Assembly: GCA_051294905.1 (NCBI GenBank)
Contig: CM119373.1
Location: 17,794,001 to 17,858,000, forward strand
Length of the DNA stretch: 64,000 bases
Direction of reading: 5' to 3'
From: Botryllus schlosseri
Taxonomy: Eukaryota
Program-made: the position numbers and the translations under genes
Notes under the pieces: model-generated
Told to the model about the DNA's origin: nothing
Database searches by the model: none
Seen by the model: the letters and a program-made list of their open reading frames with translations, nothing else
In this document: one piece after another, positions 10,345-39,200 of the stretch
Layout of the letters: every line of letters starts with the position of its first letter
How positions within the stretch are numbered: position 1 is the stretch's first letter

Positions 10345-10940
10345 TCATTTTTTCGAACAGTTCTGGCTCTCATCGCCTGCTAAGCTTAGCAGAAGACGGA
10401 CTGTCTTCGTGGCCTTGTGCATTTTCGGTCTTGTGCGTTCGTTAGCTTCGTTAGCGAGACTAACCATCTCGTCCGTGCTGAACGGGCATTTTCTCGGCCC
10501 TTCCGAAAACAAGTTATCGTAGAACTTCCGCAGTTCCTCCGGCAGTTTGAACTTGCACAAATTATCCCGATTGCCGAAGTCTGGCCACGAGTCTTGCTTC
10601 TTGAGATGAAACGACACCAACGCGATTTTCTTCCCAGATGTTTCCTCGTTACGAGTGCTTCCTATCAGACTATTTATCCATTCGTTGAAATACAGATTAA
10701 TGCAGCTTTCGTTGCTTGTCTGTGGGCTCACTAAAGCAACAATGATATCTGATTGGGCGGTTGCGTTTCGTATCCAGGTCATTGGATCTGCGATGAGTCT
10801 GACTGTCTCCCAACGGTTGTACGTGATATCCGCCAGATCGTGCTTTCTGATTTCGTAAACTAGACTTTGGAAGGCGTACGAACAGGGATTGTCCAGCTCT
10901 TCGTTGATTTTCTCTAAGAAGAGGATACGCTTTCTTCTCC
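10345..10940 (-). CDS. R2 terminal SEFIR-domain exon
   Basis: Acceptor ctgttttag at 10941-10942; RRKRILFLEK...AFQSLVYEIRKHDLADITYNRWETVRLIADPMTWIRNATAQSDIIVALVS follows the SEFIR betaA-alphaA-betaB-W...W-betaC pattern; stop at 10345. Confidence 0.88.
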
Positions 10941-13900
10941 CTAAAACAGGATGGGGATTTGTTCCGTTAAGTTGCGTATAAATTCAACTCTTCTGTAGTA
11001 TCGTAGTCCGAGATGTAGTATCGCAGTATCGTGAATTTGTATTCTGAATCTAGTTGTGACCTTTGTGTGAATTTGATTCATATTCCGGCTATGCTATGGA
11101 CAATGGACATTGAAAATGGACATGGAAGTGAAATCCGGAACATTGATCAATAAATCTAATGCAATCCTACTTGTAGGATACTTGGTAATCATTAACATTT
11201 ACTTTGAGCGAAGGCGTTAGAAACATTTATTGATGATGATCACCGATTTTAAATGATGATCGCCGATTTTATACAAGTGAGTAGTTTTAGTTGTAGCTCT
11301 AGTTGCGCATTTAAATACAAATTAGTTCTAGATGACTAGAAAACACGTAGCGTCGATAGGCGTGAGTTGAGTTGTGATTACTATGCTCTATTCTGATGTT
11401 TTTCCAACCATTTCTCAGAAAATTCACATCTAACAGTGGAGTAGCCAGGGGTGTGTTTTGAGGGTCGAAAAGCCTCCAATTTCAAAATTGAACTCCCCTT
11501 CCCATTTAAATGCCGATTATGTATCCAATCTTTCTCCTATCATTTGCAAACAATAAATTTATATTATCAGTTATTAGTTGTATTTTAACTCGTTGGTTGC
11601 GGGTTGTTATCTCAGATGAGAGATAATAAGCATTCGTTTCTTATAGTTAACAACGATCAGCGGATGAATACACTGAGCATGGAAATGACAATGTAGGTCT
11701 ACTCAAGTGTGACCTTGTGAAATCTTGAATCAGTAACTGCCTGACTATCTCTATTTTGTAACCGGCATCGACCGTGACGAATTATCACCTAGTACGTAAT
11801 TCCTGGAAGTACCATGAGATTGCGGTTTTATTCAACGTCATATCATATCGTTTGCATATCATTTATGATGGCTTGCTCCTTGCGATAAGCCGCGATATGA
11901 CAGACGTAGTCACTGCTGACGGATTTTCTATTAAGTAAACCGATTTTATCTATAATCACTCACCGATATTTGCATTCAGTCCCCAGGTGATCCATCCTAT
12001 GAACGCTATGGAGAACGCAATGCCTCCCAAAGTGATGCTAAATGTGGTTAATCCGATACCTAAAAGAGGGATAGGATCTTGTTTGTTGTTTTAAATCGAG
12101 GTCCGTGTGTCGTAGATGGAGTCAAACGTTTCATATAATCATTGCCGGCCTAAATTCCAACGATAAGTGTGTTGTAGTGCAAATTCCTGTATTCCTAAAT
12201 CCTTTCTACGAGATTGTAACAGATTAATCGACGAAGCATTGATGAAAGCTAGCGGTTACGCGATACCCATGTTGCCGTATTTTGATAATAGTAATCTTCC
12301 GTAAAATCTCTGCTTAGTCAGCTATTCCTGTGCTACGCAATGTAAAGTGCTAGCTGCACCTAGTGGTGACATTTAATTTGACGAGAGAGAAAACTAAAAT
12401 GGCGAAGTTCTCGTGGGCTTTTCGTTGCATTCGAGAACACGTCCGCGTATCCATATCATTGGTTTCGATCTATACTTGGTTGAAAATTATGTCACACTGA
12501 AATATGAATACGTTTTAATAGTGCTGTTGCTATTGGTACGAAATGGTTGATTGAGCAACTAGCTGTTGCAAGTACGGGAAAGTAAATCTGCTAACCTCAT
12601 TTCAGATTGATTGTATTTTATGTTTAATTTAGGCAGATGCTGGGGAATGAATGATAGAATGCTCAAGGCGGTATTTTTAAAATTTATTATCCTTTGTACG
12701 TAGTGCGCTGTCAAATCGTCATACTTCGAAATGAAGACGTAATAGTGTTTTCATTACCGATTTCTCGTCGAAGATATTTACGAACGGGTAGTGAATATAT
12801 CTGTGATTTGCATATTCCATATCGCACGCTAGAAATGTACCTCGTACGGGGAATGTTAATGCCATGCCGATACTTTATCTGTGTCCTAAAATAAGACCGA
12901 GTGCTATAAATACGCTTATCGGTCCATGTATCGACTTTATGTAATTGAATGGGGGTATCGTCCGGTAATTATGTCACAGACCTCGTCTAAGTCTCTTTAC
13001 CTGTGCTGGAAGGTGATGAAGATATGGTGTTGTTATCTGTAAACAAAAACATTCCTTTAAGCCTTAAAATGTATTCTCTATAATTTCTCTGTTAGCATGG
13101 TATATTGTCCACAGAGTTATAGTTATTTTAGCATGCTGAATGGTTTGTGTGTGATATGATTCGAACGGGAAATGCCTTTGTTATCAACAACTCTTACGTT
13201 ATCATGATCGGGATAAGTGCGCGACAATTTGAATTTTGTAATAACAACTAAATGTATGTGCTGTTAACTTGCTTTAGGAACTAAACCTATACGTACCAAG
13301 TATACCACTCGGTATTAATGATATAAAGAGGTCAACCAGTCGAGATACTAGAATTGTAAATTGTATATTCTTGTATCGTTGTATCAAATAAATAGCAGTG
13401 ATGTTATTATGCTACGATGGTGATTGTATGACCTCTTCAATTTTACGCATTTACGCATGCTATTTACAATGCATCTATGACACCAATGATGGTTCACCGT
13501 TCATTGTACGCACATGCGTCATGATTCATGAAAATTGGGTGCCGGACGATACTTATCGCGAGTTCGAGTCGTCCGCAAAACCTGGATTTGCAATGTATTC
13601 TTTTTTTTTGCGAAAAACATGTCAACAGTAGTTTCGGCTCGACTCACCAGTCGCTGTTATCGTAGATGCCACCGTCGTCCGTAGTTCTTGCTGTTGCTGC
13701 TCAGGCCGTGCGTGTCTGCCTTGAGAAATGAAATTGTTAGGTAAATGCGTTACCAACGGCACAGTTTATATGATCAACAGGTATAACATAACTCGCTGCT
13801 CTATATAGATGACACAAATCTGTGTGTAATCCATCTGACACGGAGAGGCTGAAGTCATTTCTCATCTCTTGGAGTATTTCTTTATTTTTTTCGAAGGAAA

Positions 13901-16900
13901 TAAGGAATCGTTAACATCTTCACGTAGTATCGCGGATTCAAATTCTTCCGACCTTTAGAGTGTCCGGAAACATGATATTTTTGGTCAATGGCCATGCAAA
14001 ATATGATGGTTTCAGAAATATTTTGGGCTCCTCTCATCAGATTTGCCTCTATTCCCCGTAACGAAAAATCATGATCATTTAGTACATGGAGTTCCCAAAC
14101 TAGGGGTCGTTCGCCTATTCTCTGAGGTCGCGGAGATGCAAATTAACTACCAATGACAATGACTATTTCATAAAAAATAACTTGGGTCGATTGGGTGTAG
14201 ATAGAAATCGATCGTTGTTATTGTATTGATTGACTTTCTTAGACTGAGGACGGATGATGACGGGTTCATAATTGTTACTACTGCTCACATATATAGTCGA
14301 CAGCTTCACGCAAAGGCAGTGAGTAGGTTTGGGCGAAGGGGCTAACCATATTTTTAGTAACATGCACGTCAAATGGAGAGGTGGGGTCGAGAAACATTAC
14401 CGAATCGAAATTTGGGGTCGCGACCATAAAAAGTTTGGGAACCCGTTGTTTAGTATCTAGGTGCTGACGATTACCCCTGACAAGCTTCAGCCGAAAATAT
14501 TCGGGTTCATTTCAAAATGAATAGAATATGCAACTGTATATTGAATTTCTTTACCTCCAAGAAGCTTTTCTTGCCCAGAGTTGGTCTGTACGCGGTAGCT
14601 TACTCCTACATTTTCGGAGTACTCAAGCGGTTATGTTTATACACTACTTCCACTGCTACTTCACAGCTTTGTAGGCTGTAGTATTGATGCTGGGAAATGC
14701 TACCATATAGTCACAACATATCAAACACATGACAATTGTCCACGACACATACGGGCAATGGTACCTACGTCTAGCACAATGTATTGTCTTTCTCGTCTTT
14801 TTATGTCGGCAATCTGAAAAGGAACGGCAGTGCTGAATGGATATCCCTTGGGTAAATCGTAAGCTGCGGGCCTTACCTGGAATCTTAACTAGCATATACG
14901 CGGCAGTGTCTTCGCCAACGTCGAAATCCCCAGGCATTGATATGATCGTCACGAGGATCTTATGTCCAGGTTCCAACGCGACGCACTCGTCGTTTTCGCA
15001 AATGTAACGATAAATGAAATGCACCTAAAGTAAAAAATCACGATTCCCGAAAACCTGAGATGGTAAAAGGGGTTTCGAGAATTCCGATACTTCACAAGAT
15101 TCAATTTCAAAAAGCGTCCAACGAAAGTGGGCCATGCTACAAGTTGGCAGCTCAGGAAATATAATCAGGAATGTCGCCCTAGTGTAAATGACCATAATAG
15201 TCGAAACACCGTAAATACCAAGAATAACAAAGACGAAATCTACAAATTAAGAACTACATTAATCGTTGTTAAGACATGGAGGCAAATTGAAAAATATACC
15301 AGTCAAAAATTTTCATGTACATTGTACAAGGTTATGTATATGAATATGTTAGTGATTTTAATATTTTTCTGTTCTCTCAGTCCACTTCAGATTTGTTCAG
15401 ACGCTAAATCAATGTCAGATTTTGCGTGTTGTGCGCTCGTAAATTGTCCCACTACACATTAGCATGCTTAGAAAATTGTGCTAAGAATCACCACGAACGT
15501 AAGTATGCTACAATATGTATCCTTGGACGTCACTCGAATGCCGAACGTCTATCTTTCGTATTACCGGCCTATCATATCTCGAACACTTACCCTTCTGCTG
15601 CCGTCTTCTTCTGTGGTGGTGTTATGAACCAAGACGTCATTGAAACAGACGTCGTAACCGAATAGCTGTCTCGTGGAGTGGAAATTTATCGTGTATCCAG
15701 TGATATCGGTCATTTGACTTGCTGCGGGAGAAACCATATAAAGATTATAGCGTGACTTAGCGCATATCTTTTTCCGACATGCACTGTGCAATGTACATTG
15801 GGGATGTGGAAAAATGACTTTTTTTCTCAAATTGTACTGGCTACTCGATAAAATTGGTAGGTTACTTAATTAAAGGCTGCACACCAACAAGTAGCCGAAT
15901 TCCTACAGCAGAAAGTTTTCTTATTTATTATATGAAAATAAATGAAACAATTTTCTAAATTTTCTCTTCACCCCATGAAACTGTCTATAGAAATGATGTC
16001 CACCAAATTTGGCTCAACTCATACCAGAGGAAGCGGAGTTATTACCGTCGAAAATTTTGGATTTGAACAAAATAGTATTTACGGTGGGCACATCTATAAT
16101 AAATACCATCGGATGAACAGAATATTTTTATTTTTTATTTATTTAATTTTATATAATAAATATAAACTTCATTCTATTGTAGCAATGCGGCTACTGGTTG
16201 GAATTGAACCGAATTTGGTGTGCAGCCTTTAATTAGGTAACTTGACAATTTTATCAAGTAGCCAGTACAGTTTGAAAAAAAGTCATTTTTGAACACCCCT
16301 TGTGCATGTCAGGCGATCCAATGTGTCATGTGTGCAATATCTATCCACCCGCATCTTATAGATATTGACCATTCCAATCACGCAAATAGTACAAATACAA
16401 CAACGATGTAGTCTTTCGACTGACGACTGTAAGACCATAAGAGAGACTATGACAAGATAGTTCTGTTCAGGGGTGGTCAAAGTACTCAGCGTTGTTAGTC
16501 AAGTAGACCTAGAAGTAACGACGTAACTACTTCGAAGTATAGAATGGTAGGTCTGAAAATTACACAATTGTTACTTTAAAGAAGTTGATTTGATCGAGGG
16601 TTCACATGCATTTAACACCTAATAGGAACTGGCTACATTCAAAGTTAACCAAATGCGTCTCCATGATTAACGGTTAATTACGGGCGACTCCCAAATGGGC
16701 TTACGGTAATACAGGGGCTATTTCACACGCTCATTACGATAATTACACTCATTGAAGTGATCCAACTCCTCTTAAAGCTATACCTTATAGTATTCAGGTC
16801 GTGAGAACAAACCCCGGCCGGATCAGACCAAATCCGAAAGTAAACTGCTATCCGCGGCTTCCCCGCTTGGCGCTCAGCATTACCAAGATAGCGTGGACGT

Positions 16901-19711
16901 GTGGTACAAGCCTTAGAAAACCTTGCAAGGCTATATCTGCACCATCATTGTCCAGCGGCATATGCACATCATGCACTCATGGTATGCATATACACAGATC
17001 GTGTGTATGTATATCATGAGTCGGTGTATGCCGCAAAACCATCAAGGACAAAAATATACAACCTCCTATTCCTCTTCCAATTTCAAAAACAAAGTGTAAA
17101 AAGTAAATAGTATTGCCAAAAAAACTGATAGGCATCAGTGGATAGATCAGGAGTTGTTGAACGTTTTTGATTAAGGAGCATTTCAAGTTTTGTGGGCGGT
17201 CGCGTGGACCCCCAAAGTATCAGAGCCCGAAAGACTGAAAAATCATTGCATGGAGATCAAATTTATTCAGGCTATTCCATGCTTAAAATAAGGTAACTAA
17301 TGACTAGACAAAGTGATCACGGACCCACTCACGATGTCATCCTAAAAGGACAATTGGCTTTTGTAGTTTCTTGATGACGTATTGTTGTTTCATGTTCCAC
17401 CTAAAACCACTTTGTGGGCCCAGAACCCGTGGATAAGTCAAAGTACTTCGTTACTGACCATCTCTGTCAGCATACCGTTACGCGGAATATCAGCCGACTA
17501 TACGACCGTATTCAGGATTCATGTATAATAGGTAATGAAGGCGTTTTCTTCACCTTTGTTCGACCAACGCAGTTCAATCCCAATCAATTTTGGACGTCTC
17601 CCTGTTTTCCGTGAAGATCCCGACACCCTTCGAGTGTTTGAGCTTTTGTAGACGTAGAACGACGCCTGGGCTTCTTCCGGTCTTGGGGCTCGGCTGGTAG
17701 CTGTTGGATAAAATGACGGCGTGCACCCTGGAATGAAAATAAACGAAGGGTGATGTATTTTCAGTGATATATGTTATCAAACAGAACAGATACGATCTGA
17801 TCGAGGTGTCAAATTGTGCTAGGGTTACTCGTAATGGATCGAATTTCTGATATGAAACCTCTTCATCTAATGGGTCTAAATACGAGTAATCGCTACTTTC
17901 GCCGTAATACGAACAATATGTTTCGCAATTGATCATATCATGCTCGGTTTATCGTACGTTTAGCTTTGAACAGTAAATCCATATAGCTGAAGGACAGATC
18001 AAATCAATATGTGATGTGCTGTTTGTTTTCGGAGGTTGATTTTTAGGATTTTTCCAAAAATCGGCCATCGTGGCTGCACATCTTTTTAATAAGGTAAGTT
18101 ACTTCAACTTATAATATAACGCATGTATAGGTTATTACAGAACTAAAGTTTATGCACCGCGCAATACGTATGGCATTGTGTTGATACGAACTGAAACTAA
18201 TTCGTACTTCAGTCTTTGTTTGTTGGAATCGCGCAGGCGATCACATTTCCTGGCAAGTGAGACTATTTCCTGGTAATAACGTTACTAAAATATAATAGCG
18301 TGGTGATTGCATAGCGGGTCTCGCAGACAAGCCGTATCAGCTCGATCTTAGCTCGCGGTCCAATGAATCCAGTCCAGGGATAGTGAAATCAGTGTCGGTA
18401 CCAGCCCGGGTGAATGAGCAGGGCTGCGACGGGAGCGATTGTCCAGCGCAAACACTGAGACGCATCAATGGACAGAAAGTGGGCGCTGATCCACCATGGA
18501 AAGTCACCACACATGAGAAACTGAATGAGTGTCTCTCACAATTGCTAGAACATGTTTGACAGTATCAAATATGGAAAAGTTATATCCATTGCGACAGGAT
18601 ACGCAATCGTTTGACGAGAAAACGTGTGAGTTTTCCCCGTGGCATATCTTTGCAAGTCTGTGCGGGCGCCAGGGCATACACCTGACAGATATCGCTAAAA
18701 CATATGTAGCGCTGGTCCTAATCTGGAATCAGATTGTAGCATTATCTACATACCCTCAACAGCCCTAGGCTGTTATTGTTGTAATTGTGTACGTTTGTTG
18801 GTTTTATTGCGCGCGTTTTAATGAGATGTAAACATTAAAATTCCGCAAGGACTTCTTTACTCACAATGGATGTCGTAAATTAAGCGACAAGTACGGATTA
18901 TGTTCACGATGCCATCTGAAATTGATAAAATCCATGTATGCGCTCTGCGCGATACTCCGTCAATGTCACATGTGACTTATTTTGAACCTGGTATAACGTA
19001 TGTTCGTTGTCCAATTCAAGCTAGACATTGATGTAGCAGCAATCGAGAACGGATTTGTGACGGAATTATTTGCTGTGTTAAACGCCCAGCGACAATTATT
19101 CGTTTTTAAAATTTTTGCCTTCCGTCGCTAGAATACCGAACCGTATTTTTGGTTTTGGCGCAAAACAGTCGGTAAACCACTATATTAGACTCTGAACTCG
19201 TACAGCGCGTGAGTCGTTAGAGTCCTCGTACCTATAACGCCTAGTTTCTAGAGGTCCTGTCAGACTGCAATCACAACTATTAGGTACGGGTAGGACCGAA
19301 CCCTGCCATCGTCACAAAGCGTTATGGAGAATAAACATTGCACAGAAACATAACATTATTTTGACGACATGTTACTGACATTATTCTCCTTCTGACCCAA
19401 AGGCAGATAAGTGCTTGGATTGTCGAAGTTATCATCACTGGCATCGCGGCATAATATAGGCGATAATCGAATATAGTCGACTCGACTCGTGCCCGATGTA
19501 ATAGAAAGTACTTCGGATACTCACATCTTTCGCCAAAGCACGACTTATCGATTCCTTCATTCGAATTCCCATCCTCTTTCGAACTGCCCGGGGCAAGCCC
19601 GAGTCTTTCCAGGGTCACACTGTCATGGCAACGTATCGCACCTTCGACGGATACTCGCGACCAGCTCTGTGCAATCGCACACACGAACACCGTTGACCAT
19701 ATCGAAGACAT
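10345..19711 (-). CDS. IL-17 receptor-like gene R2, complete, 8 exons, 482 aa (single FnIII-like domain, TM, SEFIR)
   Basis: Exons 19525-19711, 17554-17727, 15591-15721, 14877-15024, 14769-14813, 13648-13719, 11964-12059 and 10345-10940 are all GT-AG, with phases 1,1,0,1,1,1,1 and a total of 1449 nt in frame. Motifs: SCFGERWCTPS, IELRWSNKASQMTDITGYTI, VHFIYRYIC, KIPDCRHKKTRKTIHC (cf. IL17RA PDCEHARMKVTTPC), TM GIGLTTFSITLGGIAFSIAFIGWITW, then SEFIR. Confidence 0.88.
11964..12059 (-). CDS. R2 transmembrane exon
   Basis: ctcttttag ... G|GTGAGT; 96 nt, phase 1-1; IGLTTFSITLGGIAFSIAFIGWITWGLNANI. Confidence 0.85.
14084..14446. mobile_element. Degenerate hAT MITE
   Basis: Ends resemble GAGTTCCCAAAC / GTTTGGGAACCC with ggggtcgcga subterminal motifs; no clean TSD. 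Confidence 0.5.
15799..16300. mobile_element. Palindromic hAT MITE (TAGGG family), degenerate ends
   Basis: Arms match those of 50738-51404 (aaaatgactttttttctcaaattgtactggctac...); left flank atgtacat. Confidence 0.7.
16796..16885 (+). mobile_element. tRNA-derived SINE fragment
   Basis: Degenerate B-box region ggtcgtgagaacaaaccccggccgg, followed by tgctatccgcggcttccccgcttggcgctcagcatta, which resembles the conserved central domain of marine invertebrate SINEs (recalled, not searched). Confidence 0.4.
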
Positions 19712-19748
19712 TTCGGATGATTTTGTATCCCTCATCGCGAATTTCGCC

Positions 19749-26693: not shown

Positions 26694-27268
26694 TCATAAG
26701 TTATTGTACTCAGTTTGCTGCGAATTATTTTGTAGCAACGTCTCTCTTTGATGAATTGCGTCAATGTGATCCGTCCCATACTGACAATTAGACAGCGTGT
26801 TAGTTGATTGTGTTTCTAGCGCGAGGAATTTATTCATCGTCACGTCCTTGCGAATATGTTTTCCTGTTACTTTACGCAGAAGTCTGAAGAAATCCCGATC
26901 AGCTTCGTATATCAGAAACTTTGTTTGATGCTTCCTTTGATTGTTTTTCAGCGTTAAAATCGCAATGTCAGTATCGCTGGCAATTGAATGACAGTTAGCG
27001 CATTGAAGGGCTTGTTTCATTTCGCTTGACACGTTAAACTCTTCCATATCTTCGGAATAATTCCATCTTTCAACTATAAAAATGACAATTGTCGATTGGT
27101 TCATTAACTCCTGGTACCAGCGACAGCCGCTTTTTCTGATCTCTTCCTGGTTTTCCCAATTGACGGTGATGTCCAAGTTGTATACGTCACGTAACTTTGT
27201 CACCAGTCTGTGGGCTTTTACGATATCGAAACTGCTCTCCGATGTTATCATCGCTATAGAGTTGTGTC
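26694..27268 (-). CDS. R3 terminal SEFIR-domain exon
   Basis: Acceptor ctcttttcag at 27269-27270; HNSIAMITSE...AHRLVTKLRDVYNLDITVNWENQEEIRKSGCRWYQELMNQSTIVIFIV. Confidence 0.88.
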
Positions 27269-30200
27269 CTGAAAAGAGGATTCAAGTGCAAACGTTTCGT
27301 AATAGTGAACTTTATTCGTTATCAACGACGTAATGCCTGGTCCAGTCAAGTCAGGGAAGGCATGACCTTAGACCAGGGGCGGGCAAGATACGGCCCGTGG
27401 GCCGGATCCGGCCCGCGAAGGGATTTTGACCGGCCCGCAGAGAGTTTCTACCCTGAAAGCGAAACTCTTTTCTGAAAGCATTGACAAATTTGATGCGTCA
27501 CAGAACGAATCCAAGTTTGCCAACCAGAAAAAGATGGACATGAAACTACTTGCTCTGTTCGGGTGTACGTATATTTTCGACCACGAAAATTAACTAGACA
27601 AGGCTGCGTTCCAATATAATTGGTGTTCACGTGCATTCTTTACTAAGGGTTTCTACATACGACATGTAGCCATAGTTTAAATAACTTGCTGACAACTTTG
27701 ACCGACCGATGTGTGATTGACTTCTACAGCTACTGTTTGTTTGTTTTGTGGTATTCTTGGTGTTTGTCGACTACCATATAGTCATTTACACCAGGCCGAT
27801 AGTTCATATTTTTTGCTTCCATAGCTGCCGTCTTGTAGCACGGCCCACTTGTATAGGCTTTTTTACGACACAGGTTACGCGGTTGAGATGGCGAGGAGGA
27901 GCAGCTACTGTTAGTATATTTATTAAATACTGTGCTCTAAACCTAAAGTTTACATTAAATACGATTCATTCCCTATATAGGTGGATTAATGCACGATTAA
28001 GGTATATATTCTGTAATCCGGCCCGCGAAGTAATTCATTTTCCCATATCCGGCCCGCCGACCGGAAAATTAGCCCGCCCCTGCCTTAGACCTATAGTCAA
28101 AACTTTCATTGACTAGCCCAAGCGATACTGCTGGCACCGTTGTAGTCAGCATACTAACATAACGTATACGAAGGAAATGAATATAAATGAGAATAAAATC
28201 ATTTGCTTATGGTTCAGAATCATGGCAAATGTCGACCTTATTTCTGTCGGGCTTTAGATTTCCGTTAAATTTCATCTTTTACTACATATTATATATAGGC
28301 TACGTTATGATCTCCTGTCCATGTATGGAAGTCTGTATGGAAAAAACGTCTATGTGTGTGAACACTGAACAGTTCTATCGAGAAATTCTTAACTGCCGTT
28401 GCAAAGCAATCACTTCGTATTATAGTGTTGTGATAAAAAATATTACCCTACCTCTCGAAATATGATGACTCCTCTGAACCATGCACAGTAGAATGGGGAT
28501 GATGAGAAACGTTGCTATCGCCCCGGCCAGCACAAAATAGATGGTGTGATCTAAAACGACATGGCTACTTTGACAATCGAATTATTCCAATCAAACCTCG
28601 TTAAGTTTTGAGCTTTACATATGTGCGGAAGAAGGATACAGTGGACAAGGACTCAAACAGGATCCATCGATGGTGGAATAATCCAAAGTAATTATATTCT
28701 GACGCCAAATATCGTTGGCAGTCAACAACACACTTCCTACCATGATATTGATGTAGCGATATGACCTTTATCTACGCTATTTCTATTACGTGTAGGCATA
28801 GCTTGTCAACATGTCACCGTGTCAATCAAGGTGATTTAATTTCCATTGTGATGGATATCTCTAATCTGATTCCGCGGTGTATTTGTTAGTAGTGTATACT
28901 CACCAGGATACCGTTGGTGCACGAGTATTGTTGTCCTTCCTAAACAAGTGTGATAAAGAAAATGTTAACCTGAAGCTGGTCACGATTTTGCACTTCCGAT
29001 ATTGCCCCGGCGCATACCGCTTCGTATTTCCCGGAGGAAATGTCGTATACTTGCGGAGTTGCGGTGACACAATTAAGTAATGATGTCAAATGCTTTGGAG
29101 GATTAGTGTTGCAGATGGCTATCGGAACTACCATCAGATAACATGGATTGCCATATGCAAATTTGTAGATTACAAGATGTAGATAACTGGATTTTGAATT
29201 TGAGGATGTTTATGAAACACGACGTAATAACAAAGTGCATTCACGTGGCCATCGATTGGCGTATTATCGTCGTTATTACCGATTTACGTTTCCAGTGTTC
29301 ATGTTAAATATTATGAATTCGCCAGAGTAATTGCTCATGGACGCGTCAGGTCAGTATACCGGACATTCAAAATAATAGTATACTTGACATGGACATGCGA
29401 AAATAACGGAAATGTAGATTGTACAAGGTACAATTGTACATGCATTTGGAGACATAGTGAGTACTCCGTGTATTTGGTATTACCTCGTCAACGGCTACCC
29501 GAATGGTTTGTCTCCTACTTTGGATATCTCGGCTTCTATATTTTTGGCTTAATCTAATCCCCTTTCAGCAGTACTAAAGCGCAAACTACGTTTATTCTGA
29601 CTATAAGTGACGTACAGTTGCTAATATGACGTGTTCCAAGTGTGATGAAATTAACGCGGTAAATTTTGGGCGTTCAGCGGCTGATTGAATCTTACGGACT
29701 GTACCGCACTTTTGAAATTGGCGACGGACAAATACAATTCAACAAAAACTCTCGTATGATTCAGGTATACTGTTCGTTGCCAATTTGTAATTATAGAATT
29801 TTCGAGGAATTTAAGAGTTTATTCTATTGATGCTCGAATCTACAGTATGGAGTGGAACGTTTTGAAACCCGGGTCATGCCAGGATATAAACTTTACAAGC
29901 CTGACACCGGACGTGATGGGCGCATCTATATTCCTTATTCTTACCTGTTAAATTCATTTCGCTGGTCTGGTTTATTGTCCACGCTTCGTGAAACCCTGAG
30001 AGGAAAAGTTTTCTGTAACAGCCGATTGAATAATGTTTTGATGAGTCATATCTGAAGTAATTTATACAGCAATCGATTTAAAACTTCCCGTTGTTGTTGG
30101 CCGAGATAATTTCAGGCTGATAAGTCTTTTGATTACCATTATCAGCGATTCCATTTCGATGTTTCATGGTCTCGCTTGTACGTACATGTCCAATTGTCCA

Positions 30201-33200
30201 AGTACATATGCGTTGTGCACTGTAAACCCTACGTATGAGGTATTGGCTGAGAGGTGAGGTGTATTTCCCCACCCGGGACGGTAAACGAACCTGGATCAAC
30301 TGCGATATAAATCCGCATCTTACATCAGAGTGGAATTCTTAATGGATTGCATCCTGAAATACCGCGACGAGATAGCGTAGTGGTATGATCCACGGCTGCA
30401 ACACCAATAGCCCGACTGAAGTCGACTCCAGAATTCCTACCTAAGTGTTGGAGCTATATCAACGCTCCTCCTCATCTGATCCGCGCAAGCGGTGTCTTTA
30501 AAAATCCTAGCCTAGAAGTTGGCCGTACTACAAGTCGGCAGATACGGAATCAAAATGAAGACAATAGGCCTGGTGTAAATGACCATTGTAGTCGACAAAC
30601 ACCATGCATAACACAAACATACAACCTAAAATACCAATTCACCTTTCCAGTATGCTTGACATTCCGCCATTTCAGGTAATTCCAAATCCGCGAGCCTTTC
30701 ATCTTCTTCGCAGCCTAAATTTAAAATTAATCACATTTACTTCAAGACTTTCTTTATAGATATAGGTAACTCAATTACGTGCTACGGCTACGTTGATTAA
30801 ATAAGTCAGAGTCGGCAGACTATCGGTACTCCTAGTTCACTGGCCGGAAACCTTTTTCGTCAAAAGAGCCATATTGGTCCTATGATTCCTAATGAGCCAT
30901 ACAACGATATCAAATCAACTGTTACGTCACCAATCACCATCGAACATTCGTAATAAGAAATCGATGTTCTATACATGAGAACCGTCATGCGGTTTTATAA
31001 CCAATCAAACGCATCGTGCAATTTAAGATTTCCTGGGCTAATTCGCGAGAGATATTGGCTGTCGACGTGACATCAATTTGCCTTTGCGATCATGCAAACT
31101 TCTTTAGAATTTTAAAGAACGGGGCCGGATCCTCTAGAACAGGGGCGGGCAACATATTGCCGACGAAGCGATTTTGACCGGCCCGCGGAGAGTTTCTACC
31201 CTGGGAGTGGAATTCTATTCTGAAAATATTGACAAAGTTATGCGTCACAGAATGAATCCAAGTTGGCCAACCTGAGAAAGGTGGACATGAAACTGCTTGC
31301 CCTGTTCGGATCTACATACATTTTCGACCATGAACTGTAACGAGACAGGCTACGTTCCAATATAACTGATATTCACGGGCAGTCTTTACTACAGGTTGCT
31401 ACATACGACATGCAGCCAGAGCTTCTTGTTGACAGCTTTGGCCGACCACAGATGTCTGATTGACTTTAACAGCTACTGTTAACAAATTCATTAAACACTG
31501 TTCATGGTCTCTATGCTTTAAACCTAAAGTTAACATTGAATACTATTTTCCTTGTATAGGTGGATAAATACGCGATAAATGTATATATTCTGTAATACGG
31601 CCCGCCAAGTACTTTATTTACCAGTATCCGGCCCGCCTCTGCTCTAGAAGAAAAAAACGATAGCCTATCTTCACCTCACATAGACATGTGCCAACTACCA
31701 TAAGAATATGGATTCTTGTCTGGCTAATATGAAAATTTGTTGAAGAAGTTGTATCATTATTGATAATAAAATTATTAAGCGAGTTAGATGTAATATTGAT
31801 AATTTATTAGATAGCCATATCTAGGGTTACCATATTTTGAGAACTTAAACATAGGACACTTTTCAAAAATTCCGAAAGCTCCGGCACCGGACAAGAAAAC
31901 TGATGATTTTGAAAAAATTTCGACCGATAGTACTATGTTGACTAAAAAAGAGTTCCGATTGTCCTGTTTTTTTACGAAATTCTGACGTTCGTTTCGTCGG
32001 TGTCTCTTTTTTGGTCGCATTTAATCCTTTTTATAGAAAAAATGAACAAATTCCTAAAAAGACTACATTTAGGCGTCCTCCGAGTACGAATCCTCTTAAT
32101 AGAGGATGCATGGTAACCCTAGCTATATCATAACATCTAGACAACCGTGGGATTGCACTCATCCGTCTTACTTGGTATTGTTACTATGGTCTCCATGAAC
32201 TGCGGGTTGTTGTGTCGACGGTACATTGGCAACGAGTGTAGTCGGATGCGAACTCGATCTCGCGGACGGAGCCATAAGCTGCCCGTTTGTCCGATGCACG
32301 GAAATTCAAAGTGAACCACATCCTGCAAAAAGTGAACTGCATCAGACTTATTGCATTGATCTGGCATTGTAAGATATAAACAGTAGGTGACCGAGATTAA
32401 TTTGTTTTTCACTGGAATCGAACCAGAATCCTGATATCAGGGACTTCAAGGCAGAATTGGGCAACTGGAAAATATCTAGCTTTTCCAAATTAGACAAGAA
32501 TTGGGAATAGAAATAGAAAAAAGACGTTTAAGAGCTTCTTGGAGGTACAGAACTTTAACATACAATTGAATAGTATATTCATATTGAAATAAACCCGAAT
32601 ATTTTCGGATGACACTCGTCAGGGATCAGCAGCTAGTAGAGTATTGGAAAGAACATTGTATATCAACAATCGTATCTCAAAATATGACATCACCAGCATG
32701 GAATTTCGAATAAGAGAGCTTTCAATGTACTAATTTTGGATGGTGCACGACAGGGTTTTAATGACTCGAGTCGCGATTTTCTGATGACTCGACTTGACTC
32801 GAGTCATTGTCTCAAAATACGCAAATGGTCAACTTGAGTCAATCTGTGTATTGACTCGACTTCGAGTCGAGTCATCGCGCATGACTCGGACCAAGTACCT
32901 AATGTGACTCGAGTCTCAGACGGCCAAGACCTGCATTTCATTGTAATTTCGAAGAATAGTAAAGTAGCCACACTGTTGGTATTTCGCCTATTGGTACTGA
33001 CAATTGACAATGGGCCAGAAACTGTTAAAAGCGACGTAACTTAGGCTATTTCAAGTGCGAACCATTCGATATCACCAAACAGAGTTATAAAAAGTGGTTT
33101 TAACAAGACCCTAACTCGAAATTGAGCAGTCAACGCAAGGACTTGGAGTGCGTGAGTGCATGATGTCTATACGCCAGTGGACAAGGAAGATTCGAATTAG

Positions 33201-36200
33201 AATTATACTACAAAGTTTTCTTTCCAAATTAGAGTAGAATTGAAAATATAGCTGCAGTTATTTCCAAGTCAGGTTAAAATTAGAATTATAGCTACACAGT
33301 TTTTCTCCAATTTGGATTAGAATTCGAAGTACTAAATTAGCGAAAACTTGAACATAGAATCAAGTTCCATTAATATCAAATCCCAGCTCATCCTTATGAA
33401 CCTGAGACTATAGCAAATGTCCGTAAAGCAAGTTTGGCTCGTTTCGTACTATGCAGTAGGGCTGTTAAAATATAACTTTTTTTAAAATTTATATTATGCA
33501 AAACAAATTTGACTCAATCCCAACTACTAGAAGCGGATAATTTCGTTGATAATTCTCGGATTATCCTTGATTCATGGATAATCCGTGGATTATCAATGAA
33601 AAACTCCAATAACTCCGCTTCTACTAGTTGGAATTGAGTCAAATTTGTTTTGCATGGTCTCTGATGACAGCTCAACAATTTCGTGGGGTTGACAGAAAAA
33701 TTTGAATTTTTCTTTTAATTTTCCCGTATAAATTAAATAATTAATGGGATCTGCAAAGACTTATACTTGTTAGAATTGAACCAGATTTGGTGTGCAGCGT
33801 TTTTTAGGGTAACCTGACAATTTAATGACTGAATAGCTGGAATCCAGAATAAAAATATTATTGAACAACCCTACTATACAGTTTTTCTGTAGCATTTACA
33901 GGAAAACCAGAAATTACAATTAAAATATGAGCATTGAAGGCTTTCACATATTAGATTAGAATTAGATTAACGGCATTTCGCTCTAATTGGTCGAATTGTA
34001 CAACTTTAATTATCTAGTTGTCCAAATCTGCTTCAAGGAATGAATCTGAACCTTTTTCTAGGCATGTCCAATGTCTGTATTGACAACAGTCCGCTGCTTA
34101 CTGGTTACAAGTAATTGAACTCTGGAAGATTGTCATTAAACTGTGGCGGTGGCAAATTGTAGAGGATTTGTTTTATATTCATCGCTTCTATCAGGGGCGG
34201 CTAACCTTTTCGGCCAAATGGCCACATGAGATTTGCGAATCATTGCGCAGGCCACTTGAGTGTTGATGACCTTTTTTTGTCGCACGATAAGAGCGAACCG
34301 GATTAGGTAACGATGAAAACAAGAGTCCTATTACTACGAATCAGAATCGCTAACAATTATGTCATGAAAAGGGAGTCTGTATAGCGCACTAAATACCTAA
34401 TCGCGCGAACTGCGAGAAATTTTCTAAGTTTATGAATGAGTTCGTCCAATACTAATGTCCCTTGCATACATCGCATCTGTATACCGCTGGGCTCATTCGG
34501 CAAGGACAGGACAGGCGCCTGGACATATAAATATCGAAGGTTTCGGCGAATATCCGTCTGGAAATTTGTGCAAGGGCTTCATCGCCGAGTGCAAACGCGA
34601 TGTCTTATGTTGGATGACAAGTTCTCTCATAATTGCGAATATAGTCAGCCTCATTTCAGTAAATTGGGCGCATTTTTTTAATTTTCAGGAGGGGGCACTA
34701 AAAGCAACAAAATGATTGAAAATAAATCGCGCGAAGTGCTAAGAAAAATATCAAGTCAACCAAATGTACCGCGAAATAGGCTATTCTACTTTATGGTCAT
34801 ATACTAAGATCTACGGAAAATGTGGCTTGGCGTATACGCTAATGCGTCGGAGCTGATATTCCGCGGTCAGGCGATTCAAATTTTTAATTGGCCTTGCAAG
34901 TTCACAATGAATTCCCCGGGTAATTTATTATTCGATATTTTATCTATTTTCGAGAATTATCTCTCGGCCACGGGTTGGCCGCCCCTGTTCTAAATGATAT
35001 GCCGACCCGTCAATCCTATTGTGAGACATCGAAATATAATTTGTCAGATCAGGCGTTATGATACTTTGGTGTCAAAGCGTTAGCTGGTATCAGACGCGGA
35101 GAGGTAACGCACGAAGGGGTTTCGTATCCGCGCGTTGTACCAGCGCCTGCGTGCGTGATTTACGTGATATTTGATATCACATATTTTCGGGTACAAAAAT
35201 ACCTACACGTACAGTACGCAAACATTTCTGGCAAAAAACGTTATGTAAGCAATAAATATGATTGAGATGGGCAGAAGAAAGATTTACTTAGCAAAGGGGC
35301 ATATCTCATGTAAATGGTATGTTTTTGCGTCCACTGGGTAATACTTTGCCGCGAAGTTAAGTCTAGTTCATGTGTTTTGGTAGCGAGTTAACTATATTTG
35401 AAATTGAACATTTTGAGACAGATTTGCAGTTGATCATCAACTGGCGCGTTTGCGGTACCCCGGTTTCAAAATGCGAATATTTATAATATTATAGGAACGT
35501 TTGCACCACCTTAACCGTCTCATTGCCTTGCTTACGTCCATGGGTAAAGCCCGAAGCTGTACTTCGATGTTGATTTTTTTTCGCTGAAAGCTCTCTAATG
35601 TGCAGCACGAGATGAAACGTTTTTTCCTCTCGATCTGGCAGCGCATTCAACAAAATTTACGAACAAATCATTATTGCTCCTTGTATATATTATATATCTA
35701 TTGTACAAAGGCTCCACGTCGCCAACTGCATTCGCATTAGCCCACCTCGTTTTCATATATCAAGATAATTCAACCCGCATGTAACTACGACTATGAGATT
35801 TCGCGTGAAATTGTCAAGCACTATCATGGTTTTACGCCACGGTATTAATTTGACCAAACCAAAATTTTGTCAAGCATTGCACAGGGAAAAGTGTTGTACG
35901 TTAAAGGTTCGGTTCAGCATAGTTTTATCGATTCAAAAAATCACAAGATTGCGATGAAATGACAATATAAGGAATCGACGTGACGCGGGCATGTTCATTG
36001 TACACTGTATCAAAAATACTGAAGGTAACATATATATACCGCACGAGATGAAAATAAAGTGGGATGTGTCGGTAGGCTAAATCGACGTGTCAGATCCTGA
36101 CATGGTTATAGACTAGTATTCGTATAAATAGGCTGTTTCTGATGTTTCCGAAGTGAGATAATTCGTTGGCCAAGTTGTGCTGCAATGTTCATAATGGATT

Positions 36201-39200
36201 TGATCTTCTCTTCCGAGATAGAAAAGCGCATTTATATAAAATGTCTCAAACACGGTTTCCGCTCGCAACCGTTTGTTGAAATGTTAGTTACGATCTACGT
36301 ACCACCACACCACACCAGATGTGCTCCGCGTTTGCGATGCTGCGTCAGTAATCCTGTGTGACATTCACTTGCAACTTTGATTTCATTTGTCGATTGTTGG
36401 AGGCAAATTCCCGTCCATATGTGAGTGGCAACGCTGGAAACGACTTACTCGTACATATGTCAACCAGTCCGATTTCGTTCTATTCATGTGACGATTTGAT
36501 GCGACTGTTTCAGATTATGAGGCCACATGCGGAATTATATCCTATAAGTCAAAGTTCAATCCCATTGTATTGATGTTCTCAAAATATCCTTGTGTTTCGG
36601 TATCATTGTACTCTCATCAAAACCGCTCGCTCACAATAAGGCTGAAAAGGCAGTAATTTGAATATCGGTAGTATCAAACGATTGCGTTGTTGCTACGTAG
36701 CGGTGTTAGCAGCGTGAAAAATTGACTGTGGCAACAGGTACAAAAGACTTCTGGATTGGGTATCAATAGAGAATATTTTCGTTAATCGGCTTCAGTTTCT
36801 CAAGTTGCGGTGTACTGCGCGGATACTTTCACGTTCATCTCGGCTTATGTGCATCATAAATAGACTCTGGTTAATGACGCACGCGGTTGAGCGCAAGAAA
36901 GGGGGTCCTGTACACAACAGTGTACTTATGTAATTTAGAAACTTCAGGCATGGCGTGCGATGTTCCCTCTAACTTTTCACGAGTCTGCGCGCACTCACCA
37001 ACTCACTGCGCAACTCGACGCAAAATAAAGTCCTTGTGATGAGTCCTATCTTGCCGGTTGATCGTAACTCAGCATCCATATTATGCGGAACAAAGCTGGG
37101 GATGTTCGCTGAAACGACTACTAATCTCTCGATTAGTAATCAACCCACGACATTGTCAGAAAGCGCTTTGAAATAGCCATGAAGTGCAAAAACTTTTAAT
37201 TATTTCTACCATAATTCGTAATGTAACTATTGGAACTCTTCAGATAGCCAGATTTCGTTGAAATAACGTTTTTTCATGTAAAAAGTTGTCAGTTTTTGAG
37301 GCATAAAAGTTTTTTTTTGGCCAAACTACTTCGTAAGGACAGACAGTTCCAACGAAAAATGAAGATAAGTAGTACATTTCTAACAATATGTGGGAAAACA
37401 CCTAATTTGCATACGGTAGGTCAGATTTGGTGAAAATTAATATTTTTAAGGTCAAAATCTTCCGTAATTTAGGTAAAAAAAATCGCACAAGTTATAAGTC
37501 ATTCTTTGCGTACAAATGCCGGGCTTAGGGACGAAGAAGAATGCCGTGAATCAGATGTCACGTGTCTCTCCAATAACGGGGACATTTATACACTGGGCCT
37601 GTTGTGTATTGCAATTTATGTATTGAATGTTGTGGCTTTTAATAGTTTCTATGCATCGCAGTGGATATGTCGACATCATTTTACTCGTGAAAGATTTTCG
37701 CGCAGACCTATTATTCGTTTCAAATCACGAGATCGAGGCGGACCGAATTGGTAAAACACGGTCAGGGGCCTACGAATATCGTAGGCCACGCACGGTTTCC
37801 GAGATTTGAATCCAAATCCAAATTCATTATGGAAATGAGACACCAAATTTTAGGTTGATTTTGAAATTTTGAACATGTTTTTATTCACCAGTCCGAAAAA
37901 TTAGTATTGAAATTATGCCGTTCCCCGCAAGCTACAATGATTCAGAACCTCGAACGAAGATCTACGAAAAATGTGGCTATAAGCTACGCCAATGCGTCGG
38001 AACTGATATTTTGGTCAGCAACATCCCAAATGTCGCGATCAGGCTAATCAAATTTTTGGTTGGCCTTGCAAGTTCACAATAAATTACTTTGGTAATTTAT
38101 GTTTTGATATTTTAACTAATTTTGACAATTACCCCGCGGGCAACTAAACCTCTCGGGCCACGGGTTGGCCGTCCCTGAATTAGACGCACACAAGTGAAAT
38201 TGCGCGACAATTTGAGTATACGAGTACATCAACCTGACAATAATGCTCATATTAGGGGATTACAAACGAGGAAGCGGGTATTCAAGTATGGTAATTCGTC
38301 GTTTACGTCGAGCGTAATGGGTCCGGAGTATTGTTTGCCGATTACAATCGGACTGGATTGCATTTTCCAATTAGCGCTCGCAACTTCAAAGCATGCACAA
38401 AAAGACAGTGTCCAGTTACGCGTTCCTATCAAAATGACTGTCGAGAAAATCTGGTTCACGAATTACTGCAAGCACGGGAACCTGGCTTTAATTCAGAGGA
38501 GAAAGGGTATGAGCCCGCCTAATCGTAAGAAGATTAGGTGTCCGGCAATTTTGGCGAATTGAATAAAAACTGTAACATTTAGAAATTCTTAACGACCCAT
38601 TATTAGGGTGGAGTGAAAAATGGAAAATTTTGAATTTTAAAACGGACACTTGATATGTGGTGCCAAATTGAAAAAAAATAATTTCTATAATAATTTTGGG
38701 CTCGTGCACCCTCTAGTGGTCGTGCAATTGCACCGAACGAGCCAAAAATAGCTAATTTCGCTATATATTGATGACCGCTTCCTCTAGAAAACTGATTTTG
38801 GTCTCAAAAGATGCGGAAGCAACAAGTTTCTATCTCACTTCCACGGAACTTTGTCTTAAAAATGAACAGAAAAAAAGTTACAAGCAAATTATTGATTTTT
38901 AGACCATTTTTCGGTAAAATTATGCATTGAAGCAGGGTACGAAGCCAAAAGCATGTAGTGATCGATCTTATGACTGACAACTCCATATTGGAAACACATA
39001 AATTGCTAATTCATATTGAAAACACAAAACCATCAATTCCATATTGAAAAAAGATCTATTTCGAAGATGATTTCACTACCAGAGTATTAGTCTGCACAAA
39101 CTTTGAAATCTTGTTTTGTATTGAAAGATTTCATCTGTTTTTGAGACTTCAGTTTTTCTCTGATTAAGTCATCTCTACGTTTAAATCCCGACACATGGGC

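What the first reader, a model, noticed from the sequence alone, without database searches (positions are those of the whole stretch)
10345..19711. R2 is a compact IL-17R-like receptor with only one FnIII domain
Seen: after the D1-closing PDC...C exon (14769-14813) comes only a 72-nt Gln/Thr-rich stalk exon (RHARPEQQQQELRTTVASTITAT) and then the TM, fully in frame. Neighbouring R3 has extra D2 exons at this position. Established: vertebrate IL17Rs use two FnIII domains to grip IL-17 dimers. Inference: D2 loss through phase-1 exon deletion gives a receptor with altered ligand range, or a co-receptor or decoy role, within the same cluster.
Basis: partly seen in the sequence, partly recalled or inferred. 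Interest (0 to 1): 0.7.

Follow-up and report, generated by a model that had tools for sequence, protein, structure and literature searches.

The report
One-domain IL-17-receptor-like gene, family-wide trait
R2 is an intact sea-squirt gene for an IL-17-receptor-like membrane protein whose outer part has only the first of the usual two ligand-binding domains, but its neighbours and its relatives in two other sea squirts share this, so it is an old family trait and not a recent loss in R2.

Summary
On the minus strand, eight GT-AG exons (19711-10345) give an uninterrupted 482-aa type I membrane protein. The order is signal peptide, one IL-17R D1-type FnIII domain, a 45-nt C-x10-C exon, a 72-nt Gln/Thr stalk exon, the TM exon and a divergent SEFIR exon.

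The C-x10-C exon has the spacing of the disulfide-stapled D1-D2 linker of human IL-17RA. The protein therefore stops where D2 would begin. No D2 is hidden in the introns.

The Styela clava relative (LOC120344281, three NCBI isoforms) and a homologue on a contig from an unidentified ascidian have the same architecture. The contig homologue also shares the exon phases.

All four tandem genes on that contig lack D2. My model of neighbour R3 has two tiny stalk exons (51 and 36 nt), not D2 exons. D2 absence is therefore a family trait, not an R2-specific deletion. A pure decoy role is unlikely, because a SEFIR domain is kept.

Weak points:
- No RNA evidence: the single read-laying run was lost to a filter.
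- The D1 fold rests on a low-confidence model and sub-threshold Pfam scores.
- A 36-nt Ser/Thr-rich candidate stalk exon (13036-13001) remains untested.

The scan already holds a similar, unchecked note on another contig (s1-236864).

The parts
19525..19711 (-). R2 exon 1: start codon, signal peptide and Cys-containing N-terminal extension (aa 1-63). An in-frame ATG also lies upstream at 19735.
   Evidence: aligns with the N-termini of the S. clava and L003 homologues.
17554..17727 (-). R2 exon 2: first strands of the D1 domain (WC...P.P...YVYK...IELRWSN), phase 1-1.
   Evidence: conserved motifs in the alignment; tblastn matches.
15591..15721 (-). R2 exon 3: middle strands of D1 (GYTINF...VCF), phase 1-0.
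14877..15024 (-). R2 exon 4: last strands of D1 (HFIYRYICENDECVALEPG...VKIP), phase 0-1.
   Evidence: E=0.017 against the L003 homologue, spanning exon 4, the open 63-nt intron 4 and exon 5.
14769..14813 (-). R2 exon 5 (45 nt, phase 1-1): C-x10-C segment with the spacing of the disulfide-stapled first part of the IL-17RA D1-D2 linker.
   Evidence: The homologues have the same C-x10-C spacing. The Pfam D1 profile ends at the second Cys of the S. clava relative. IL-17RA Cys185-Cys196 is reported in PMC9637376. The VIA alignment ends at IL-17RA residue 200.
13648..13719 (-). R2 exon 6 (72 nt, phase 1-1): basic then Gln/Thr-rich stalk, RHARPEQQQQELRTTVASTITAT.
   Evidence: It sits where the 168-nt stalk exon of the L003 homologue sits, and the S. 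clava relative has a longer stalk at the same point of the protein.
13001..13036 (-). Candidate extra or alternative stalk exon (36 nt, phase 1-1, DNNTISSSPSST). It is unverified and would not add a domain.
   Evidence: the only candidate in intron 6 that passes the splice filters. Paralogues have a second stalk exon of 33-72 nt, and S. clava isoform X1 has a 30-aa cassette at this position.
11964..12059 (-). R2 exon 7 (96 nt, phase 1-1): transmembrane segment.
   Evidence: Kyte-Doolittle maximum 1.75 at aa 258-259; the basic RRKR that follows is encoded at the start of exon 8. The L003 homologue's TM exon is also 96 nt.
10345..10940 (-). R2 exon 8: divergent SEFIR domain, C-terminal tail and stop codon.
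   Evidence: Pfam SEFIR E=0.0043, 17.8 bits, below the 23-bit cut-off. The SEFIR of the L003 homologue scores 48.7 bits and aligns with R2 at E=1.7e-13.
26694..32322 (-). Comparator: 3' part of neighbour R3. Exon 4 is 32322-32172, linker exon 30714-30643, stalk exons 29995-29945 and 28939-28904, TM 28550-28452 and SEFIR 27268-26694. It has no D2.
   Evidence: The model is in frame, and exon 4 and SEFIR match genes on contig L003/L004. It is a prediction without RNA support.

Best explanation
R2 is an intact member of a fast-evolving, tandemly duplicated family of IL-17-receptor-like genes seen so far only in ascidians.

Shown here: it encodes a type I membrane protein with these parts in order.
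- A signal peptide and a Cys-containing N-terminal extension.
- One IL-17R D1-type FnIII domain.
- The disulfide-stapled (C-x10-C) start of what in vertebrate receptors is the D1-D2 linker.
- A short basic and Gln/Thr-rich stalk (24 aa, perhaps 36) in place of D2.
- A transmembrane helix.
- A divergent SEFIR domain.

Also shown: the one-domain ectodomain is the family's normal state. The S. clava relative, the homologue on contig L003/L004, its three tandem neighbours there, and R3 (on my model) all share it.

Inferred: D1 would bind a cystine-knot ligand of the IL-17 type through the equivalents of IL-17RA sites 1 and 2. It would lack the site-3 contact and the elbow movement that D2 supplies. 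The SEFIR domain would recruit a SEFIR adaptor of the CIKS/Act1 type. R2 would act alone or paired with another receptor chain.
For: - Gene model: eight canonical exons, 482 aa, no internal stop.
- Collinear homology with S. clava LOC120344281, E=2e-30. Its three NCBI isoforms add at most a 30-aa cassette between D1 and the TM.
- In the window's own genome, the only match to that S. clava protein is R2's SEFIR exon.
- The L003 homologue has the same eight exons and phases: a 42-nt C-x10-C exon, one stalk exon and a 96-nt TM exon.
- D1 identity: Pfam IL17R_fnIII_D1 on the S. clava relative gives E=0.001, covering residues 89-202 and profile positions 46-152 of 154. The AF2 model has seven strands plus a terminal helix. 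The top 17 Foldseek PDB matches are all IL-17RA or IL-17RB chains, E 3.6e-5 to 2e-3. VIA-align gives Z 8.1, with model residues 42-185 on IL-17RA 67-200.
- Linker identity: IL-17RA Cys185-Cys196 also has C-x10-C spacing (PMC9637376).
- SEFIR.
- No hidden D2.
- All four genes on L003/L004 (428-493 aa), and R3, lack D2.
- R2 has only 45 aa between the end of D1 and the TM window. IL-17RA's D2 alone is about 101 aa.
Against: - There is no transcript evidence for R2 itself.
- R2's own SEFIR score is below Pfam's cut-off.
- The Pfam D1 score of the S. clava relative is below the cut-off.
- The AF2 model is of that relative, not R2, and has mean pLDDT 41.6. Z of about 8 is in the range VIA-align gives for common beta-sandwiches.
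- Sequence and profile searches of the PDB found no IL-17R.
- Ligand binding and signalling are pure inference.
- The R3 and L003/L004 gene models are my own predictions.
Confidence: 0.75

Rival explanations
1. R2 recently lost D2 exons that its neighbours still have.
For: All post-D1 exons are phase 1-1, so a clean deletion is mechanically possible. R2 has the shortest D1-to-TM spacer of the family, 45 aa against 56-77.
Against: The S. clava relative, the L003 homologue, the three L003/L004 paralogues and R3 all lack D2. R3's extra exons encode only 17 and 12 aa.
Confidence: 0.05
2. The gene model is incomplete, and real D2-coding exons lie unrecognised in introns 13720-14768 or 12060-13647.
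For: Relaxed scans find open phase 1-1 stretches of up to 210 nt. No RNA data were laid.
Against: Those stretches have poor acceptor signals. Part of intron 5 looks to the eye like an inverted-repeat element, which I did not test. With the filters met by all true exons, only 30-, 81- and 36-nt candidates remain. The homologues with compact introns show nothing there. The S. clava isoforms add at most 30 aa.
Confidence: 0.04
3. R2 is an unexpressed or decaying duplicate. It would be an intact-looking pseudogene in a rapidly turning-over cluster.
For: Divergence is extreme: 24% identity to the S. clava relative. SEFIR is sub-threshold. The TM segment is weakly hydrophobic, KD 1.75 against 2.7-3.3 in relatives. 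No run on record as RNA holds the stretch.
Against: The 1449-nt ORF across eight exons is intact with canonical splice sites. Cysteines and motifs are conserved across three species. A 56%-identical SEFIR fragment exists in another public sequencing run (P0001). Several runs guessed to be RNA hold 21-24% of the stretch's sampled words, close to its exonic share of about 19% (my arithmetic). That last point is only suggestive.
Confidence: 0.1
4. The family is not derived from IL-17 receptors. It would be an unrelated FnIII or Ig-like domain joined to a TIR/SEFIR-like domain.
For: Pfam D1 is below the cut-off. The profile search of PDB sequences hits only VAP MSP domains, weakly. Generic beta-sandwiches reach similar VIA Z scores.
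Against: Several independent resemblances coincide. SEFIR is above the cut-off in the L003 homologue. The only Pfam ectodomain hit is IL17R_fnIII_D1, and it ends exactly at the second linker Cys. IL-17RA and IL-17RB occupy the top 17 Foldseek ranks among 350,542 chains. The C-x10-C spacing matches the IL-17RA linker disulfide.
Confidence: 0.06

Closest known systems
Human IL-17RA and IL-17RB ectodomains (PDB 3JVF, 4HSA, 7UWM, 7UWK)
   Same: Type I receptor with a non-canonical FnIII D1 that carries an N-terminal extension. A C-x10-C segment follows D1, with the spacing of the IL-17RA linker disulfide Cys185-Cys196. The cytoplasmic domain is SEFIR. These chains are the best structural matches of the S. 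clava relative's model.
   Different: There is no D2 (about 101 aa in IL-17RA). The site-3 beta-strand contact and the D1-D2 elbow are therefore missing, and a 24-36 aa low-complexity stalk takes their place. Sequence identity is about 10-16%.
Styela clava LOC120344281 (XP_039269350.2, XP_077969407.1, XP_077969408.1), named 'uncharacterized protein' by NCBI
   Same: The whole architecture is collinear with R2, including the conserved cysteines, the PGC...C linker and the basic cluster after it. It is the closest full-length relative found, and its only match in this genome is R2's SEFIR exon.
   Different: Only 24% identity. The stalk is longer (about 55 aa). A 30-aa cassette is optional (X1), and isoform X3 carries the cassette in place of the TM segment.
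'Degenerated double-FN3' IL-17 receptors of invertebrates (Proc Natl Acad Sci 2024, PMC11087794)
   Same: These are fast-diverging IL-17R ectodomains and SEFIR domains that domain models barely detect, and they have arisen repeatedly in different subphyla.
   Different: That paper treats such receptors as double-FN3 with degraded sequence, or with added EGF or Ig domains. Here the second FN3 is absent, not merely unrecognisable. Two full-text searches turned up no paper describing a single-FN3 IL-17R.

Membership tests
IL-17 receptor family (canonical, as in IL-17RA to IL-17RE) | Type I topology: N-terminal signal peptide and a single transmembrane helix | tested here: met
   Hydrophobic N-terminus MSSIWSTVFVCAIAQSWS. 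An uncharged stretch spans aa 253-281, with a Kyte-Doolittle maximum of 1.75 and RRKR following it. No dedicated signal-peptide or TM predictor was available.
IL-17 receptor family (canonical, as in IL-17RA to IL-17RE) | Cytoplasmic SEFIR domain | tested here: met
   R2 alone scores 17.8 bits, E=0.0043, below the 23-bit cut-off. The SEFIR of the L003 homologue (P0006) scores 48.7 bits, E=1.3e-12, and aligns with R2's SEFIR at E=1.7e-13. The feature is therefore met through homology, not by R2's own score.
IL-17 receptor family (canonical, as in IL-17RA to IL-17RE) | First FnIII domain of the IL-17R type (Pfam PF16556) | tested here: inconclusive
   The S. clava relative scores 19.1 bits, E=0.001, against a 26-bit cut-off. 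R2's separate exons give no hit. The AF2 model has low confidence, pLDDT 41.6, yet its top 17 Foldseek hits are IL-17RA or IL-17RB, and VIA-align gives Z 8.1 on IL-17RA residues 67-200. A PDB profile search found no IL-17R. The balance leans towards met.
IL-17 receptor family (canonical, as in IL-17RA to IL-17RE) | Disulfide-stapled helical D1-D2 linker (IL-17RA Cys185-Cys196) | tested here: met
   C-x10-C occurs in R2 exon 5 and in both homologues, the same spacing as in IL-17RA (PMC9637376). The model shows a helix inside the loop. The disulfide itself is inferred.
IL-17 receptor family (canonical, as in IL-17RA to IL-17RE) | Second FnIII domain (D2, Pfam PF16578), giving the 'double-FN3' ectodomain | tested here: not met
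   Only 32 aa lie between the second linker Cys and the TM window. No credible exon is hidden in the introns. D2 is also absent from the homologues and paralogues. The genome-wide Pfam D2 scan was uninformative.
IL-17 receptor family (canonical, as in IL-17RA to IL-17RE) | Binds an IL-17 family cytokine and signals through a SEFIR adaptor | not testable with these tools
   No binding or signalling data exist, and no complex prediction was attempted.
Soluble or decoy cytokine receptor | Lacks a signalling domain, or lacks a membrane anchor | tested here: not met
   The R2 model has both a TM segment and a SEFIR domain. Only S. clava isoform X3 lacks the TM exon.

The most novel reading that the evidence does not exclude
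Ascidians carry a conserved, expressed clade of IL-17-receptor-like proteins that work with a single D1 domain. That would show that D2, the site-3 contact and the elbow movement are dispensable for ligand capture and SEFIR signalling. Alternatively, these receptors may have been re-tuned to another ligand. The conserved polybasic motif just after the linker disulfide might also allow convertase shedding of a soluble D1.
Probability: 0.3. Interest if true: 0.6.

Novelty: new variant of a known kind. Interest (0 to 1): 0.42.

Why it matters
IL-17 receptors are defined in the literature by a double-FN3 ectodomain (PMC11087794), and structural work gives D2 a role in ligand contact (site 3) and in the elbow motion that follows binding (PMC5566378, PMC9637376). 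A conserved receptor family in the closest invertebrate relatives of vertebrates that keeps D1, the stapled linker and SEFIR but drops D2 would be a natural minimal version of the receptor. It would make testable how much of IL-17 recognition resides in D1. The finding also corrects the local story. The cluster is not a mix of two-domain and one-domain genes, so R2 is an ordinary member of an unusual family, not an exceptional member of an ordinary one.

Tried and rejected
- RNA evidence. The look-up of sequencing runs listed candidate runs.
- Representative-protein search with R2's SEFIR exon. It gave six hits. P0003 (3574 aa, 194-aa repeats, no TM) and P0005 (a repetitive 1076-aa protein with no receptor features) are spurious and were dropped.
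- The search for homologous proteins with P0004, and with a mixed SEFIR alignment A4. Both returned only P0004, so no S. clava paralogues could be fetched.
- The look-up of encoding contigs. It had no record for P0004 and no DNA for P0001.
- Pfam on single R2 ectodomain exons gave nothing.
- Genome-wide exon-level scans. PF16578 (D2) and PF15037 found nothing, and PF16556 (D1) gave one sub-threshold hit elsewhere. These scans cannot show presence or absence of D2 in this genome.
- PDB sequence searches. The protein search found nothing. The profile search found only weak VAP MSP hits.
- Alignments A1 and A5 of exon fragments were visibly misaligned and were not used for folding.
- The spliced R2 protein could not be folded or searched directly, because it has no single reference and I did not type it in.
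- R1 could not be modelled with confidence from the sequence alone.
- tblastn of R2 against the window finds no paralogue, because the paralogues are too divergent.
Full report
**1. The observation**

Reading the minus strand from 19800 to 10300 and joining the candidate exons gives eight exons with AG/GT borders. They are 19711-19525, 17727-17554, 15721-15591, 15024-14877, 14813-14769, 13719-13648, 12059-11964 and 10940-10345. The CDS is 1449 nt, encodes 482 aa and has one terminal stop.

The 45-nt exon encodes (P)DCRHKKTRKTIHCAR. The 72-nt exon encodes RHARPEQQQQELRTTVASTITAT. The next exon is an uncharged 29-residue segment followed by RRKR, which is the transmembrane segment. The last exon gives a weak Pfam SEFIR hit (E=0.0043, 17.8 bits against a 23-bit cut-off). 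Every exon from the 45-nt one through the TM exon is phase 1-1.

**2. Is the model real?**

I searched 1.84 billion representative proteins with the SEFIR exon and got six hits. One is a full-length relative, Styela clava LOC120344281 isoform X2 (P0004, 514 aa). R2 aligns with it collinearly from the first ectodomain cysteines to SEFIR (E=2e-30, 24% identity). In the window's own genome (495 Mb), the only match to P0004 is R2's SEFIR exon.

A second relative lies on a 24-kb genomic contig from a public sequencing run of an unidentified ascidian (L003). I modelled that gene by hand. It has the same eight exons with the same phases: a 42-nt C-x10-C exon, a single 168-nt stalk exon, a 96-nt TM exon, and a SEFIR exon that passes Pfam's cut-off (48.7 bits).

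The three-species alignment conserves the cysteines. It also conserves the motifs E.WC, P.P, YK, I.L.IKWSN, GY, IC, F.Y.Y.C...CV..PG and IPGC(x10)C.

**3. What the ectodomain is**

The S. clava relative gives a sub-threshold hit to Pfam IL17R_fnIII_D1 (E=0.001). Residues 89-202 match profile positions 46-152 of 154, so the profile ends at the second cysteine of the C-x10-C segment.

An AlphaFold2 model of its residues 22-206 is of low confidence (mean pLDDT 41.6). It contains seven strands and a terminal helix. Its 17 best Foldseek matches among 350,542 PDB chains are all IL-17RA or IL-17RB (E 3.6e-5 to 2e-3). VIA-align places model residues 42-185 on IL-17RA residues 67-200 (Z 8.1, 132 aligned), which is D1 plus the start of the linker.

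[quoted passage not shown] That is the same C-x10-C spacing as in R2 exon 5.

In IL-17RA, D1 makes ligand sites 1 and 2, and D2 makes site 3 (PMC5566378).

**4. Are D2 exons hidden?**

A relaxed scan of introns 13720-14768 and 12060-13647 finds many mechanically possible open phase 1-1 stretches, up to 210 nt, but their acceptors are poor. I then required a pyrimidine tract and a donor score that all seven real R2 exons with an acceptor meet. Three candidates remain.
- A 30-nt candidate.
- An 81-nt candidate, which would leave only a 34-nt intron.
- A 36-nt candidate at 13036-13001, encoding DNNTISSSPSST.

Together they could not encode the roughly 101 aa of an IL-17RA-type D2 (residues 173-273 of mature IL-17RA).

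The homologues agree. The L003 gene spans only 1.0 kb between the linker exon and the SEFIR exon, and the stalk and TM exons account for its coding content. NCBI's three S. clava isoforms differ only by a 30-aa cassette between stalk and TM (X1), or by that cassette replacing the TM exon (X3).

R2 has 45 aa between the last D1 strand and the TM window. The two homologues each have 77 aa there.

**5. The neighbours**

The contig L003/L004 carries four tandem genes in one orientation. I modelled all four, and the proteins are 428 to 493 aa. Each has one D1, a C..C linker segment, a short stalk, a TM segment and a SEFIR domain, and none has D2. Three of the genes carry one or two small phase 1-1 stalk exons of 33-168 nt. 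In the fourth, linker, stalk and TM share a single 252-nt exon.

R3 in the window matches two of these genes in D1 and SEFIR. It has a linker exon at 30714-30643 encoding CEEDERLADLELPEMAECQAYWK, which ends like the paralogues' FLYWK and KYYWK. It has stalk exons at 29995-29945 and 28939-28904. With TM at 28550-28452 and SEFIR at 27268-26694, the chain is in frame. That leaves 56 aa between D1 and the TM.

R3's 'extra exons' therefore exist, but they encode 17 and 12 aa of stalk, not a D2 domain. The one-domain ectodomain is a trait of the whole family and pre-dates the split of these species.

**6. Mechanism**

Shown: an intact gene, its architecture, and the conservation of that architecture.

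Inferred from the IL-17RA structures: D1 would contact a cystine-knot ligand at the dimer interface (sites 1 and 2). There would be no site-3 strand pairing and no elbow rotation. The short stalk would hold D1 close to the membrane. The SEFIR domain would recruit a SEFIR adaptor.

Because SEFIR is kept, a pure decoy role is unlikely. Pairing with another receptor chain is possible but untested. The very fast divergence and the tandem duplication are the pattern described for 'degenerated' invertebrate IL-17Rs (PMC11087794).

**7. Known or new?**

The S. clava gene is labelled 'uncharacterized'. The 2024 survey defines IL-17Rs by a double-FN3 ectodomain and speaks of degenerated, not missing, domains. 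Full-text searches for a single-fibronectin IL-17 receptor and for ascidian IL-17R found no description.

The scan itself holds a similar unchecked title on another contig (s1-236864) and a followed-up ascidian-specific IL-17R-like cluster (s1-306297).

I file R2 as a new variant of a known kind.

**8. Limits**

- No RNA was laid, because the call was lost to a filter on places 16114-16166.
- The spliced R2 protein could not be folded or profile-searched as a whole.
- The fold evidence comes from a low-confidence model of the S. clava relative.
- The paralogue models are my own predictions.
- Whether the 36-nt exon is used is open.

Noticed in passing
window 13001-13036 (-): A 36-nt, phase 1-1, Ser/Thr-rich open segment (DNNTISSSPSST) with a good acceptor (tgtttttgtttacag) and donor (gtaaag) lies in the stalk-to-TM intron. 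It may be a second or alternative stalk exon, like the 33-72-nt second stalk exons of paralogues and the 30-aa cassette of S. clava isoform X1.
   Followed up: partly
window 13700-13719 and 14769-14775 (-), R2 aa 227-233: A basic cluster directly follows the second linker cysteine in R2 (ARRRHAR), in the S. clava relative (NRRKKAR) and in the L003 homologue (RERRGKRS). The last fits a furin-type R-x-K-R site. It could be a shedding site or a charged juxtamembrane motif.
   Followed up: no
window 14814-14876 (-): Intron 4 of R2 is only 63 nt, in frame and free of stops. Retention would insert 21 aa (GKARSLRFTQGISIQHCRSFS) between the last D1 strand and the linker.
   Followed up: no
window about 14085-14445 (-): Intron 5 contains what looks like an inverted-repeat element (gggttcccaaacttt ... 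agtttgggaactcc), possibly a small transposon. It accounts for the longest open stretches in that intron.
   Followed up: no
window 26694-41587 (-): R3 appears to span about 15 kb. D1 exons 2 and 3 form one open stretch at 41587-41207, and a roughly 9-kb intron precedes exon 4 at 32322.
   Followed up: partly
The true start codon of R2 is therefore not settled.
   Followed up: no
G000:C3:17870448-17870720 (-), about 12 kb right of the window: A further Pfam SEFIR match (37.5 bits) lies on the same strand, so the receptor cluster extends beyond the window. R1's SEFIR exon and R4's D1 exons also lie outside it.
   Followed up: no
P0008 (S. clava isoform X3), cassette column block 258-287 of alignment A2: One NCBI isoform of the S. 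clava relative carries the 30-aa cassette in place of the TM exon. That predicts a D1-SEFIR protein with no membrane anchor.
   Followed up: no
L003 1-13662 and L004 954-5486: A public contig from an unidentified ascidian (sequencing runs SRR10746997 and SRR10746996) carries four tandem one-domain IL-17R-like genes with short introns. It is a convenient reference for this family.
   Followed up: yes
It lies in no exon and was left alone afterwards.
   Followed up: no
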